Assembly: GCA_002269645.1 (NCBI GenBank)
Contig: NIVC01001300.1
Span: forward strand, 248,001 to 312,000
Reading direction: 5' to 3'
From: Macrostomum lignano
Lineage: Eukaryota
DNA length: 64,000 nucleotides
The notes beneath the pieces were generated by a model, which had not been told where the DNA came from, did not search any database, and saw nothing but the letters and a program-made list of their open reading frames with translations. Positions 36,001-38,378 of the stretch are shown piece by piece; position 1 is the first letter of the stretch, and every line of letters starts with the position of its first letter. A program made the translations under genes and the position numbers.

Positions 36001-38378
36001 GCGAGTCCGCTGCCGCAACTGTCAGGCCAGCTCATCATCGGCGGCTTCAGCGGTCTTCTGGCAGCCCCGGCTCCGCCTCCAATTGAAAGCAGCGGCACTA
36101 AAGGCAGGTCAAGAAGATCACTGCCTGCCTTACCTACTAGCATTTCGTCAACGCTTTCAACGAATCTCACCGCATTTCGAGGAATCATTGCATCTCCGAA
36201 GCTCAATGGACTCAAACCGCTCATTCTGGGTTCAGTGGAGTCCAACGTGACTGACCTGCTGCCAGGTGCCGTTGCTGCCAGCGAAACCGAATCCATCACT
36301 GATGGAGTCGTCAATGAAGACGTTTGCACAAACTGGGAACCCTGCCAGAAAAATGCGACCTGCACCAATGTGTTCTACAACAAGTTTTCGTAAGCAATGT
36401 TTAGGGATTACATTCGATATTAGATTGAAATTACTCTTTGAAGCCTTTAAAATTCGCAACCTGCACAAATCAAATTTTAGCTGCGAATGCGAACCTGGCT
36501 GGCGCAGTGCTGATTGCTCAGTCAGGGACCACTGCGTCCCTGGATCGGAGGACTGTCCGACTGGCGCTCAGTGCGTCAACTTGGAGCCAAGGGGATACGA
36601 GTGTGAGTATTTATTATTTGCTATAAAGTACAAGCCGCAATAAAAATATACTCAGCCATATCGAAAAGTCGCCATCACAGAAGATTCCGTCTGTGGTCGC
36701 CACTTTTGAGAGTGCAGGTAAAGTCTCTCAATCTTTGCGAGTGACGCAACCAACTTAGCTACGTCACGGCAGACTTGAGTGGAAGAATGAAGTCGGGGAA
36801 GCGGTGTGCGAGGGTTGGACGGATTAAAGCTACCCCGATCAGTTATCTTCCATTTCAGTTTTCTCGTACAGTCCAAGATAAATTGCTCACTGGCGCCTAA
36901 AACTCGTATACTCAGCAACAGTCAAAAGTTCCACCTGTGCAAATCACGCGTAGTTTGAGAGAAAACTTCTCATTTCAAATGCACAGTAAATGGTAAATAA
37001 AAATAGATTTGCTTGGTAGGTGAAACTTTTTACTGTTGTTGAGTATATACTTTTTTCAATATATGTATGCATAGCAACAAAGCGTTCTACATTTTCTGCT
37101 TCTCCGACCACCAAACTCGCCAGGTCGCACAACCGCCACATTCCAATCCTCCACAAAGCTGAGATTATCGGCCAGCCGCTTCAATGAAGCATTGACGAGC
37201 CTCACTGGCTGGGCCCGCACCCGCGAGCTGAACTTCCGACTGCTGTCTATGACCAACAGCGACGGTCGCCAGCTGTTTGTCGAGGCCAAGTCCGGCCATC
37301 TTCGAGTGTCCCTTGACAACAAGCACGCGATGTCCGATTTCTCCATAGCAACCGGCTTCCCATTTACGTTTGACGTCAGGTTTTTCACCGAACGGCGCTT
37401 AGAACTCAGTGCGAAGTTCAATGGCACCGACGCTGCTACGACTTTCAGCGAATCTCATGACTTTGCACCGCTGACTCTCGACTCTGCTGCTGTGGTAGTT
37501 CTTGGCGACAGCGGCTTTAAGGGTTGCCTTGGCAACGTGCGACTCAACGGCTACTTGGTCCCGCTAGTGAACCGGTCGCTCCCCTCCGACACGCCGGGAT
37601 TTTCCTGGTCTGCAACTGACGCGGATTCCATCATCTCACCAACGCCTGGTTGCCATGGAGACGTAGTATGTAAAACGGGTGTCTGTCAGAACTCCGGTCG
37701 TTGCAGCGACATGTGGAACAAGTATGTCTGCGATTGCAAAGATGGGTTCTCCGGACCCACGTGCTCTGCCGTCGCTTCGGTGCCCTCGGTGGGAGCGATA
37801 ATTGGAATGGTTGCTGGAGTTGTGGTCGCCGCTGGCATAATTGTTGGTTAGTAAATCGGTTGAGCCGTTTCTGCCAAAATCGATCACATTCTAGCGTAGA
37901 TACCTACTGACAAACCATTTTTAGTATATTGATTGGTATCCATACATTAAAAGGGGTGTAGGATCTCATATGTGGGTCCCTCAATCTCCTAAAAGGGCGT
38001 CCCCCTTACCCTGTCTACTAGAGCTGGTGGTTGTGGATGCCACGTCCAAGAGCTTGCAAAAGTTGAACTCCTATAAATTGTCGAAGCCCGGTTGCCTCTT
38101 TTATTTTGTTTTTAAGAGGTGAAGCGTAGCTTTTAATAGCATTAGTGTTGTCTAGTTTTTAGTTATTACCCTTAGTCTGCAGAATGATGAATTCATCTCC
38201 AATATCCCCAAAACCCATCGCAGCTATTGTCCTGGTCGCAAAGTTCACCACGCTGTTCCGTCCAAGCGCTTCATCGGATCTTCAGTCTCAGTCCAAGTTG
38301 GATCCGACCACCGGGGTTCGCGTTGGTCACCTGCGATCGAAGTCGGCCAAACCGGTGCCTCAAGAGGTGTTTTTTTGA
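6029..38378 (+). CDS. crb: Gene B: Crumbs-family EGF/laminin-G transmembrane protein (~1404 aa) with non-canonical tail
   Basis: join(6029-6125,6193-6480,10412-10604,19348-19692,30152-30597,33721-34991,35815-36389,36481-36602,37124-37846,38224-38378) = 4215 nt, all GT-AG, phases match. Order is SP, 13 EGF (including the Crumbs-signature [23 protein letters not shown]), LamG1, EGF, LamG2, 2 EGF, LamG3, EGF, TM, tail ending PQEVFF*. This is the CRB1/Crumbs domain order. The symbol denotes family membership, not proven orthology. Confidence 0.85.
6995..7520. repeat. (TGTC)n microsatellite
   Basis: About 130 tetranucleotide units with few interruptions. Confidence 0.98.
8790..10170. repeat. 21-bp minisatellite (CCATCCATCATCTCACAGAAC)
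   Basis: About 65 copies in gene B intron 2; decayed copies at 6600-6670 and 44900-45000. Confidence 0.97.
10620..10960 (-). mobile_element. Degenerate non-LTR retrotransposon 3' fragment
   Basis: Shares GATCCTGTGGTGCNGGTGTC and GATTTT..CCTGTAGGTAGC..ATGAC with the 46180-46790 LINE fragment. Confidence 0.45.
11520..12219. repeat. 22-24 bp minisatellite (GGTGCTTGAGGATGGTTTGTAGTTG), left part
   Basis: Tandem copies interrupted at 12220 by a LINE; the array resumes at 18121. Confidence 0.95.
12315..16056 (-). CDS. pol: LINE ORF2: AP endonuclease + reverse transcriptase + RNase H (one frameshift at ~15375)
   Basis: APE motifs QEPW, GDLNAHH, SDH (15373-16056); [10 protein letters not shown] and YADD; RNase H YTDGS, LDSQAAL, WVPGH; CSFC...HFVSIC. 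An extra T in a T-run (GCC TTTT AAC) joins the two frames. Confidence 0.9.
16096..17659 (-). CDS. LINE ORF1 (DUF4780-like by resemblance), with internal stop at 16259 and a G-run frameshift
   Basis: The 466-aa ORF has a low-complexity N-terminus and a globular core ([23 protein letters not shown]). The acidic sequence continues past the TAA (DADEEASS...) and then in the 16096-16326 frame. Confidence 0.7.
18121..18440. repeat. 22-24 bp minisatellite, right part
   Basis: Same unit as 11520-12219. Confidence 0.95.
20959..23873 (-). mobile_element. Internally deleted Ty3/Gypsy (Mag-like) LTR retrotransposon
   Basis: LTRs at 23664-23873 (5') and 20959-21178 (3'); 5-bp TSD GAGGC at 20954-20958 and 23874-23878; PBS TGGCGACGAGG; gag with two CCHC knuckles, protease DTGAS, RT FVDD. 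RNase H and the integrase core are missing. Confidence 0.93.
21332..23650 (-). pseudogene. gag-pol: gag-PR-RT remnant fused to the integrase C-terminus
   Basis: ATG at 23650 ([13 protein letters not shown]), a frameshift near 23530, 662-aa ORF ending RSFLG, then a jump to [12 protein letters not shown]... (integrase C-terminal part, ORF 21332-21634). Confidence 0.85.
24370..24728. repeat. GGTTGGGTGCTTG-type minisatellite (continues 29210-29300)
   Basis: Degenerate relative of the 11520/18121 array, split by the Gypsy element. Confidence 0.85.
24729..29209 (+). mobile_element. Ty3/Gypsy (Mag-like) LTR retrotransposon with aberrant 3' LTR
   Basis: 5' LTR 24729-25028 (TGT...ACA); PBS TGGCGACGAGG at 25030; PPT GGGAGGGGGAAAA at 29010-29022. 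The 3' LTR matches only the first 126 bp, then ends with an inverted 54-bp copy of the LTR start. GGTTG flanks both ends. Confidence 0.93.
25041..28996 (+). pseudogene. gag-pol: gag-pol polyprotein (Gag, PR, RT, RNase H, integrase) with one stop and one frameshift
   Basis: ATG 25041; CCHC knuckles; PR IDCGA; RT ILDD; RNase H TDAS...[10 protein letters not shown]; TAA at 27738-27740; integrase H-H-C with the last Cys absent (CGASE); frameshift near 28070; DDE motifs [18 protein letters not shown]. Confidence 0.9.
31050..32710. repeat. 27-bp minisatellite (CCCCACCTCCAACCCTGTGTAGCTTAG)
   Basis: About 60 copies in gene B intron 5; some units are 26 bp. Confidence 0.97.
36649..37045. mobile_element. 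Two adjacent MITEs with TACTCAGC(A/C)A TIRs
   Basis: 36649-36906 is a reverse-orientation, right-truncated copy of the 52592 MITE. 36909-37045 is a 137-bp element with TIRs TACTCAGCAACAGTCAAAAGTT / AACTTTTTACTGTTGTTGAGTA, flanked by TA. Confidence 0.8.

What the first reader, a model, noticed from the sequence alone, without database searches (positions are those of the whole stretch)
38224..38378. New conserved cytoplasmic motif pair GVRVGHLR and PQEVFF-COOH replaces the Crumbs GTY/ERLI tail
Seen: B ends ...[25 protein letters not shown] and D (60170-60321) ends ...[25 protein letters not shown]. The rest of the two tails is unrelated, so these two blocks look selected. Established: the Crumbs tail uses GTY (FERM binding) and PPxERLI (PALS1/Par6 PDZ binding). 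Inference: PxPQEVFF is a remodelled PPxERLI with a hydrophobic class-II-like PDZ ligand (V-F-F), HRGPW in D may be the relic of RGTY, and GVRVGHLR is an undescribed binding motif.
Basis: partly seen in the sequence, partly recalled or inferred. Interest (0 to 1): 0.75.

Follow-up and report, generated by a model that had tools for sequence, protein, structure and literature searches.

The report
Flatworm Crumbs paralogues with new tail
Extra copies of the cell-polarity gene Crumbs in the flatworm Macrostomum lignano have swapped the usual short intracellular tail for one with two strictly conserved short motifs, probably a new docking site for a scaffold protein; the normal Crumbs genes are still present, so this is a lineage-specific variant.

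Summary
Window 38224-38378 and 60170-60321 are last coding exons ending ...TGVRVGHLR-x7-PQEVFF*.

The organism is Macrostomum lignano. Both genes are tandem EGF/laminin-G type I membrane proteins. Their closest relatives outside the species are named Crumbs proteins with GTY...ERLI tails.

A third, divergent tail class (E, in two other M. lignano contigs) carries the same two blocks with the same 7-residue spacing. Between the three classes the motif codons show pN = 0.00 and pS = 0.42-0.67, while the linker has pN = 0.39-0.75. This is protein-level purifying selection, not recent identity.

The tail exon sits behind the same phase-1 intron in the membrane helix as the canonical M. lignano Crumbs tail exon.

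- **"Remodelled ERLI":** cannot be shown statistically (HMM 0 bits; hhalign P = 0.048).
- **"HRGPW relic of RGTY":** not supported.
- **Canonical Crumbs:** still present, with two ERLI-ending types, one lying next to these genes.
- **Window copy D:** a 14-nt insertion shifts the frame before the membrane helix; intact D-type copies exist elsewhere.
- **Other species:** nothing was found, but the tools could not test this properly.

The most likely function is a two-part scaffold (PDZ) docking tail. This is inferred, not shown. I rate it a new variant of a known kind, of moderate interest.

The parts
38224..38378 (+). Gene B last coding exon. It encodes the end of the membrane helix plus a 45-residue cytoplasmic tail and the stop codon.
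   Evidence: The same junction is used in UniProt model A0A1I8JA97.
38310..38336 (+). Motif 1 in B: T-GVRVGHLR.
   Evidence: Invariant in the B, D and E classes, with pN = 0.
38358..38378 (+). Motif 2 in B: PQEVFF followed by stop TGA. This is the free C-terminus.
37124..37846 (+). Gene B penultimate exon: laminin-G domain, EGF domain and most of the membrane helix ([19 protein letters not shown]). Donor GTTAGT lies at 37847.
   Evidence: Hydropathy maximum 2.99. AF2 predicts a helix at pLDDT about 90. It is 46% identical to canonical M. lignano Crumbs P0003/P0152.
36482..36602 (+). Gene B EGF exon ([12 protein letters not shown]...PRGYEC). Donor GTGAGT lies at 36603.
6029..6125 (+). Gene B first coding exon with the signal peptide [23 protein letters not shown]. 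Gene B therefore spans about 6029-38378. Further exons lie near 6192-6485, 10405-10605, 19376-19693, 30132-30605, 33699-35000 and 35803-36390 (approximate).
   Evidence: EGF and laminin-G Pfam hits.
60170..60321 (+). Gene D last coding exon. It encodes the end of the membrane helix plus a 44-residue tail and the stop codon.
   Evidence: The junction matches PAA70383.1 and PAA90322.1.
60253..60279 (+). Motif 1 in D: T-GVRVGHLR.
60301..60321 (+). Motif 2 in D: PQEVFF followed by stop TGA.
59948..60098 (+). Gene D exon with the EGF end ([12 protein letters not shown]), a short stalk and the membrane helix ([19 protein letters not shown]). In this window a 14-nt insertion at about 59989-60002 breaks the frame and gives a premature TGA at 60048-60050.

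Best explanation
These are the last coding exons of two members (B, about 6029-38378; D, about 55276-60321) of a tandemly expanded Crumbs-like gene family in Macrostomum lignano.

**Shown**
- The proteins are type I membrane proteins with EGF and laminin-G outer domains.
- The last exon lies behind the same phase-1 intron, six codons before the first basic residue after the membrane helix, as in the species' canonical Crumbs gene.
- It encodes a 44-46-residue tail that is predicted to be unstructured and lacks both the FERM-binding motif and ERLI.
- Two blocks, T-GVRVGHLR and P-x-PQEVFF-COOH, are separated by exactly seven variable residues. They are invariant in three otherwise divergent tail classes and are kept by selection on the protein.

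**Inferred**
- The tail is a two-part docking site for a cytoplasmic scaffold.
- The free C-terminus E-V-F-F has the E-x-hydrophobic-hydrophobic form of the type II PDZ ligands (EYFI, EWLI, EWYV, and ERLI itself). These are bound by MAGUKs of the MPP/PALS1/CASK group.
- GVRVGHLR would be a second contact upstream, as the Crumbs tail needs PDZ plus SH3-GK of PALS1 for tight binding.
- With no FERM-binding motif, these paralogues would link a Crumbs-like outer domain to a scaffold without the moesin/Yurt link. The partner could be different from, or the same as, that of canonical Crumbs.
For: - **Family and organism:**
- **Third tail class E and gene neighbourhood:**
- **Shared intron position and phase:**
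- **Selection:** pN = 0.00 and pS = 0.42-0.67 in motif codons between the three classes, against pN = 0.39-0.75 in the 7-codon linker. Invariant columns are clustered.
- **Membrane helix and unstructured tail:**
- **Signal peptide:**
- **Literature on PDZ ligands:** MPP PDZ domains bind type II EYFI, EWLI and EWYV motifs, and MPP5 needs PDZ-SH3-GUK for high-affinity CRB binding (PMC7662862). Crb-CT touches PDZ, SH3 and GK. That paper's authors suggest that a peptide ending in Phe, or carrying a hydrophobic residue in place of the PBM Arg, might bind the PALS1 pocket with higher affinity (PMC8187709 section 9).
Against: - No binding data exist, and no partner was identified.
- A C-terminal Phe is an uncommon PDZ position-0 residue.
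- GVRVGHLR matches no Pfam family or solved structure, so its role is a guess.
- The motif pair was seen only in one species.
- Window copy D is frameshifted.
- Expression and splicing rest on deposited gene models, not on reads examined here.
Confidence: 0.5

Rival explanations
1. The tail is a direct, strongly diverged descendant of the canonical Crumbs tail and still binds Stardust/PALS1 (and perhaps Par-6). G-V-R-V would descend from the conserved central G-x-R-V-E-M block, and K/P-P-x-P-Q-E-V-F-F from K-P-P-P-E-E-R-L-I. Only the FERM-binding half would have been lost.
For: - The intron position and phase are the same as in the canonical gene.
- hhalign picks exactly this collinear alignment with P = 0.048.
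- Anchored at the C-terminus, B shares K(-8), P(-7), P(-5) and E(-3) with the canonical consensus.
- The authors of the PALS1 structure paper suggest its PDZ pocket could take hydrophobic residues at positions 0 and -2.
Against: - The profile HMM of canonical tails gives 0.1 and -0.1 bits, no better than 12-14% of shuffles.
- hhalign probability is 1.1%.
- The G-x-R-V block needs a 2-residue shift.
- M. lignano's own canonical tails lack the RVEM block.
- There is no nucleotide similarity between the exons.
Confidence: 0.25
2. The C-terminal FF is a trafficking signal rather than a PDZ ligand. It would be a COPII ER-export signal like the FF of ERGIC-53/LMAN1 [12 protein letters not shown] would be a separate sorting or unknown motif.
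For: - The tail has a terminal di-phenylalanine on a short type I tail.
- The FF of KKFF is required for ER export (PMC9797344).
Against: - An export signal does not explain invariance of the whole P-x-P-Q-E-V-F-F block.
- It does not explain the fixed 7-residue spacing to a second invariant block.
- E at -3 and V at -2 are typical PDZ determinants.
Confidence: 0.15
3. The shared blocks are leftover identity from a very recent duplication or gene conversion, with no selection on the peptide.
For: - Other parts of B and D are 94% identical at DNA level (33718-34997 against 57973-59248).
- M. lignano has many recent duplicates. D against the L001/L002 D-type copies is nearly identical across the membrane-helix and tail exons and the intron between them.
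Against: - Between classes B, D and E, about half of the synonymous sites in the motif codons differ (pS 0.42-0.67) with no amino-acid change.
- The seven codons between the motifs are almost all changed.
- blastn finds no DNA similarity between the B and D tail exons at E <= 1e-5.
Confidence: 0.03
4. The conservation serves a nucleotide-level element. One candidate is the GT after PQE used as a splice donor, as in the deposited fused model A0A1I8JA97. Alternatively, the genes are decaying pseudogenes.
For: - A0A1I8JA97 leaves the exon at PQE|GTG and continues into the next gene.
- Window copy D is frameshifted.
Against: - Third-position variation inside the motifs (GAG/GAA, CCT/CCA/CCG, CGC/CGA/CGT) argues against a DNA or RNA constraint.
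- The downstream "exon" of the fused model is a low-complexity reading of intergenic DNA.
- Intact copies of B, D-type and E exist.
Confidence: 0.04

Closest known systems
Crumbs (Crb/CRB1-3) family, including the canonical M. lignano Crumbs genes (PAA62533.1/PAA70382.1 type and PAA89249.1 type)
   Same: - EGF and laminin-G outer domain, one membrane helix and a short cytoplasmic tail.
- The last 332 residues of B are 46% identical to a canonical M. lignano Crumbs.
- The best hits in other animals are Crumbs proteins.
- The same phase-1 intron lies inside the membrane helix, and the genes share a cluster.
   Different: - No FERM-binding motif (RxxxGxYxPS) and no ERLI.
- The tail is 44-46 residues rather than about 37-41.
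- Two different invariant motifs are present.
- D and E types lack the last laminin-G/EGF unit.
Type II PDZ-ligand tails bound by MPP/CASK MAGUKs (glycophorin C and CADM1 EYFI, Caspr2 EWLI, nectin EWYV, neurexin/syndecan type)
   Same: - Short tail of a type I adhesion-type protein.
- It ends E-x-hydrophobic-hydrophobic-COOH.
   Different: - Those tails pair the PDZ ligand with a 4.1/FERM-binding site next to the membrane, which is not recognisable here.
- Terminal Phe rather than Ile, Val or Ala.
- No sequence homology.
CRB3 isoform b (alternative last exon ending CLPI instead of ERLI; from my own knowledge, not checked here)
   Same: A Crumbs-family protein whose tail end is exchanged and loses the PALS1-type ligand.
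   Different: That case is a splice isoform of one vertebrate gene. Here separate paralogous genes carry a tail with two conserved motifs.
ERGIC-53/LMAN1 KKFF tail
   Same: A type I membrane protein with a terminal FF.
   Different: - That tail is 12 residues with a dilysine signal.
- No relation in sequence or outer domain.

Membership tests
Crumbs family | Outer domain made of EGF and laminin-G repeats, homologous to Crumbs | tested here: met
   - Pfam finds EGF and Laminin_G.
- The closest solved structures are neurexin and Notch modules.
- HMMER against 1.84 billion proteins places canonical Crumbs of M. lignano (E = 1.7e-74) and Crumbs of many animals at the top. Those whose names I looked up are called Crumbs or CRB-1.
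Crumbs family | Type I single-pass membrane protein (signal peptide plus one membrane helix) | tested here: met
   - Signal peptide in B exon 1.
- Hydropathy maxima of 2.4-3.0 over 19 residues.
- AF2 helix at residues 48-77 of the B EGF-to-C-terminus fragment that was folded.
Crumbs family | Short cytoplasmic tail (<40 residues; 10.1101/228452) | tested here: not met
   The tails are 45 (B), 44 (D), 46 (D-type intact) and 46 (E) residues. They are close to the limit but longer.
Crumbs family | FERM-binding motif RxxxGxYxPS next to the membrane | tested here: not met
   - Absent in B, D and E.
- HRGPW of D is HRSPW in intact D-type copies.
- The canonical-tail HMM gives about 0 bits.
Crumbs family | C-terminal ERLI (E/D-R/K-L/I-I/L) PDZ ligand | tested here: not met
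   The C-terminus is EVFF in all copies. Only E(-3) and the hydrophobic character at -1 and 0 are shared.
Crumbs family | Gene structure: the tail exon lies behind an intron in the membrane helix, as in the species' canonical Crumbs | tested here: met
   The intron is phase 1, with a split codon plus 5 residues before the first basic residue. This holds in B, D, E and the canonical gene.
Type II PDZ ligand | Hydrophobic-x-hydrophobic at the free C-terminus | tested here: met
   V(-2)-F(-1)-F(0) directly before the stop codon in all copies. This tests the pattern only.
Type II PDZ ligand | Actual binding to a PDZ domain | not testable with these tools
   No complex prediction or binding assay was available. 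M. lignano PDZ proteins could not be retrieved.
COPII di-phenylalanine ER-export signal | FF at the extreme C-terminus of a short cytoplasmic tail | tested here: met
   The pattern is present. The function was not tested. The precedent is LMAN1 KKFF (PMC9797344).

The most novel reading that the evidence does not exclude
T-GVRVGHLR-x7-PxPQEVFF-COOH is a previously undescribed two-part docking module. It arose in macrostomid flatworms inside the Crumbs tail exon, possibly in part by reading the old FERM-binding codons out of frame. It recruits a partner other than Stardust/PALS1 and Par-6. This would give a second, FERM-independent Crumbs-like membrane complex alongside the canonical one.
Probability: 0.25. 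Interest if true: 0.55.

Novelty: new variant of a known kind. Interest (0 to 1): 0.36.

Why it matters
The Crumbs tail is one of the most conserved short tails in animals. Its two motifs are treated as the signature of the family.

Here a tandem array in one flatworm keeps canonical Crumbs genes and, beside them, paralogues whose tail exon carries a different pair of strictly conserved motifs. This is a natural experiment on how a polarity receptor can be rewired by changing one small exon.

If the partner were identified, it could reveal a new PDZ or other recognition specificity. It could also give a function to the expanded Crumbs-like genes of a regeneration model that can be made transgenic.

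As it stands, this is a lineage-specific variant without functional data.

Tried and rejected
- **Word-indexed protein search with the C-terminal 332 residues of B and with a profile of the tails.** Only chance hits came back (P0001, and P0158, a GC-rich 83-residue ORF with GVRVGHL). Neither search returned any M. lignano protein, although such proteins are in the collection. Absence elsewhere therefore cannot be concluded.\n- **Exact look-up of the tail-exon ORF.** Nothing was on record.\n- **Origin of the new tail by frameshift of the canonical exon.** One base out of frame, the canonical FERM-binding codons read RVWHLRP, against RVGHLRP in D. Shuffle tests give 111/5000 (D), 407/5000 (E) and 617/5000 (B). 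Nucleotide alignment is within shuffles. I kept this as an unexplained hint, not a finding.\n- **A short intron to rescue the D frame between EGF and membrane helix.** No GT-AG pair with a suitable length keeps the last EGF cysteine. Comparison with intact copies shows a 14-nt insertion instead.\n- **Pfam and PDB searches with the tails.** Nothing was found beyond a chance match to a mitoribosomal protein (E = 0.5).\n- **14-3-3, PP1 (RVxF) and SH3 class I/II patterns.** I checked these by eye. None is conserved across B, D and E.\n- **The Li et al. 2014 PALS1-Crumbs structure paper.** It is not held in the library, so I used secondary descriptions.
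Full report
**1. What is in the sequence**

Window 38224-38378 (+) starts just after an AG acceptor and runs to a TGA stop. Joined in phase 1 to the exon 37124-37846, it reads ...[19 protein letters not shown]|[51 protein letters not shown].

Window 60170-60321 (+) joins in the same way to an exon ending at 60098. It reads ...[18 protein letters not shown]|[50 protein letters not shown].

A pattern scan of all six frames finds GVRVGH and QEVFF* only at these two places. The stated coordinates are right. They begin on the second base of a split codon, which is why a naive translation fails.

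**2. Organism and gene family**

- The upstream exons encode EGF and laminin-G domains. The closest solved structures are neurexin-1-alpha, Notch and Delta-like modules.
- I ran a full HMMER search of 1.84 billion representatives with the last 332 residues of B. The top hits are all from Macrostomum lignano:
  - A0A1I8JA97 is a deposited model of gene B fused to the next gene.
  - P0003/P0152 is 46% identical and ends ...RRKESGTYGPSKAE...PPPEERLI.
  - P0004/P0155 includes a member ending ...GQYRPSKEE...PPTEERLI.
  - P0062, P0144 and P0157 are D-type proteins ending ...[24 protein letters not shown].
- Below these come about 30 proteins ending GTYSPS...ERLI. Those whose names I looked up are called Crumbs or CRB-1, in lamprey, shark, teleost, Nematostella and nematodes; the amphioxus hit is unnamed.
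- Gene B has a signal peptide in its first exon at 6029-6125 and a strong hydrophobic helix.

The species also keeps canonical Crumbs genes.

**3. More copies, and a third tail class**

I fetched the contigs that carry P0157 and P0062 (L001 and L002, assembly GCA_002269645.1). Both show the same arrangement:
- an upstream gene (E);
- then a D-type gene;
- then, 5.6-9.4 kb further on and convergent, the canonical Crumbs gene ending ERLI.

Gene E ends (G)[51 protein letters not shown]. Its segment next to the membrane and its linker differ from both B and D. The two blocks and the 7-residue spacing are identical.

**4. Selection versus recent identity**

| Comparison between classes B, D and E | pN | pS |
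|---|---|---|
| 15 motif codons (T-GVRVGHLR and PQEVFF) | 0.00 | 0.42-0.67 |
| 7 linker codons | 0.39-0.75 | similar to the motif codons |

- blastn does not align the B and D tail exons at E <= 1e-5, although other exons of the two genes are 94% identical.
- Of the last 40 columns, 18 are invariant across the three classes. They are clustered, with a longest run of 9 (permutation p = 0.004).
- The third-position variation also rules out a DNA or RNA element as the object of conservation.

**5. Relation to the canonical tail**

*Gene structure.* In the canonical gene the last exon starts ccag|TT GCA GTG CTG CTA TTC AAG TAC. This is phase 1, with a split codon plus five residues before the first basic residue. 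B, D and E have exactly the same arrangement. The new tail exon therefore sits at the position of the Crumbs tail exon.

*Sequence.* Homology of the tails cannot be shown.
- A profile of 31 canonical tails scores the two M. lignano canonical tails at 28-31 bits. It scores B, D and P0062 at about 0 bits, no better than 12-14% of shuffles.
- hhalign gives P = 0.048 and probability 1.1%. Its alignment pairs TGVRV with the canonical G-x-RVEM block and KPVPQE with KpPPeE.
- Nucleotide alignment of the exons is within shuffles.
- The proposed RGTY relic (HRGPW) is not conserved even among D-type copies (HRSPW) and is absent from B and E.

*A curiosity.* Read one base out of frame, the canonical FERM-binding codons give RVWHLRP. 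This is suggestive for D only (111/5000 shuffles) and was noticed after the fact.

**6. State of the two genes in this window**

- B is open in all exons examined, and a deposited model from another assembly has the same tail.
- That model, A0A1I8JA97, leaves the tail at PQE|GT and runs into the next gene. This looks like a prediction artefact.
- D carries a 14-nt insertion (about 59989-60002) and a 3-nt insertion relative to the intact D-type copies. This shifts the frame between the EGF end and the membrane helix and gives a TGA at 60048-60050.
- This copy is therefore probably a pseudogene, a truncated form, or an assembly error. The evidence for selection rests on B, the intact D-type copies and E.

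**7. Mechanism**

*Shown.* The tail follows a membrane helix and has no predicted secondary structure (pLDDT 49-62, single-sequence AF2). It has no Pfam or PDB match. This fits short linear motifs.

*Inferred.*
- E-V-F-F at the free C-terminus fits the type II PDZ ligand pattern.
- It resembles the E-x-hydrophobic-hydrophobic ligands of the MPP/CASK/PALS1 MAGUK group: EYFI, EWLI, EWYV and ERLI itself (PMC7662862).
- PALS1 needs PDZ plus SH3-GK to hold the Crumbs tail tightly. The authors of PMC8187709 suggest that a C-terminal Ile, Leu or even Phe, and a hydrophobic residue in place of the PBM Arg, might bind its pocket with higher affinity (section 9).
- A second invariant block at a fixed distance upstream fits such a two-part mode of binding.

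The main rival reading is that FF is an ER-export signal like the FF of LMAN1 KKFF (PMC9797344). That reading does not account for the invariance of P-x-P-Q-E-V or for the fixed spacing.

**8. Limits**

- No protein outside M. lignano with the motif pair was found.
- The word-indexed search returned no M. lignano proteins at all, so it is not a valid test of absence.
- No genomes or transcriptomes of related flatworms were searchable here.
- Splicing and expression rest on deposited gene models.

**9. Verdict**

This is a real, selected motif pair in the tail exon of Crumbs paralogues. I rate it a new variant of a known kind. Its function is untested and it is so far seen in one species only, so its interest is moderate.

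Noticed in passing
window 59989-60050: Window copy D has a 14-nt insertion relative to the intact D-type genes of L001 and L002. A 3-nt insertion lies a little further downstream. The shift puts the EGF end and the membrane helix in different frames and gives a premature TGA at 60048-60050. The cause could be a pseudogene, a truncated secreted form or an assembly error.
   Followed up: yes
L001 2240-2397 and L002 about 2960-3116 (+): A third tail class (gene E) ends ...[46 protein letters not shown]. An AATAAA lies about 10 nt after the stop.
   Followed up: yes
L001 26220-26363 (-), L002 27306-27450 (-): The canonical Crumbs tail exon (...GTYGPSKAE...PPPEERLI*) lies 5.6-9.4 kb downstream of a D-type gene in convergent orientation. 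Canonical and novel-tail genes therefore share one cluster. The window ends 3.7 kb after D, so whether the same holds here is unknown.
   Followed up: partly
L001 26290-26330 (-): Read one base out of frame, the canonical FERM-binding codons give SQRVWHLRPVQG*. This resembles RVGHLRP of tail D in 6 of 7 residues. The match is weakly significant and was noticed after the fact (D 111/5000 shuffles).
   Followed up: partly
window 38367-38378 and 39741-40169: The deposited UniProt model A0A1I8JA97 uses the GT inside PQE|VFF as a donor. It reads on through a low-complexity stretch into the first exons of the next gene (42064-42399). It is probably a chimeric prediction.
   Followed up: partly
window 12315-15497 (-), 21540-23528 (-), 25029-28996 (+): Three retroelement reading frames lie in the long introns of gene B: one with RT and RNase H, one with RT, and one with RT, RNase H and integrase. 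They explain the 32-kb span of the gene.
   Followed up: partly
window 3040-3300, 50388-51832, 6973-7608, 8718-10229, 31116-32648, 24377-24742, 61035-61637: Long arrays of short tandem repeats lie in introns and between genes. They include a repeat with 15-nt periodicity (by alignment offsets) that is also found in L001 and L002, a roughly 21-nt array, and a longer repeat reading PPPTLCSLA. In translation they give long false ORFs.
   Followed up: no
window 2692-4278 and 42064-50363: Two further family members (A and C) have different ends. A has a membrane helix at about 4063-4278 (GISSAVTIVLGVALGALLIVVLSVV...). C may have one at about 50085-50363. Neither has the [14 protein letters not shown] tail or ERLI. 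Another M. lignano member (A0A1I8G109) has a long Ser/Asp-rich tail. The family therefore has at least three tail types.
   Followed up: partly
window 33718-34997 against 57973-59248: This part of B and D is 94% identical at DNA level, while their tail exons are too diverged for blastn. The mosaic points to gene conversion or unequal crossing-over within the tandem array.
   Followed up: partly
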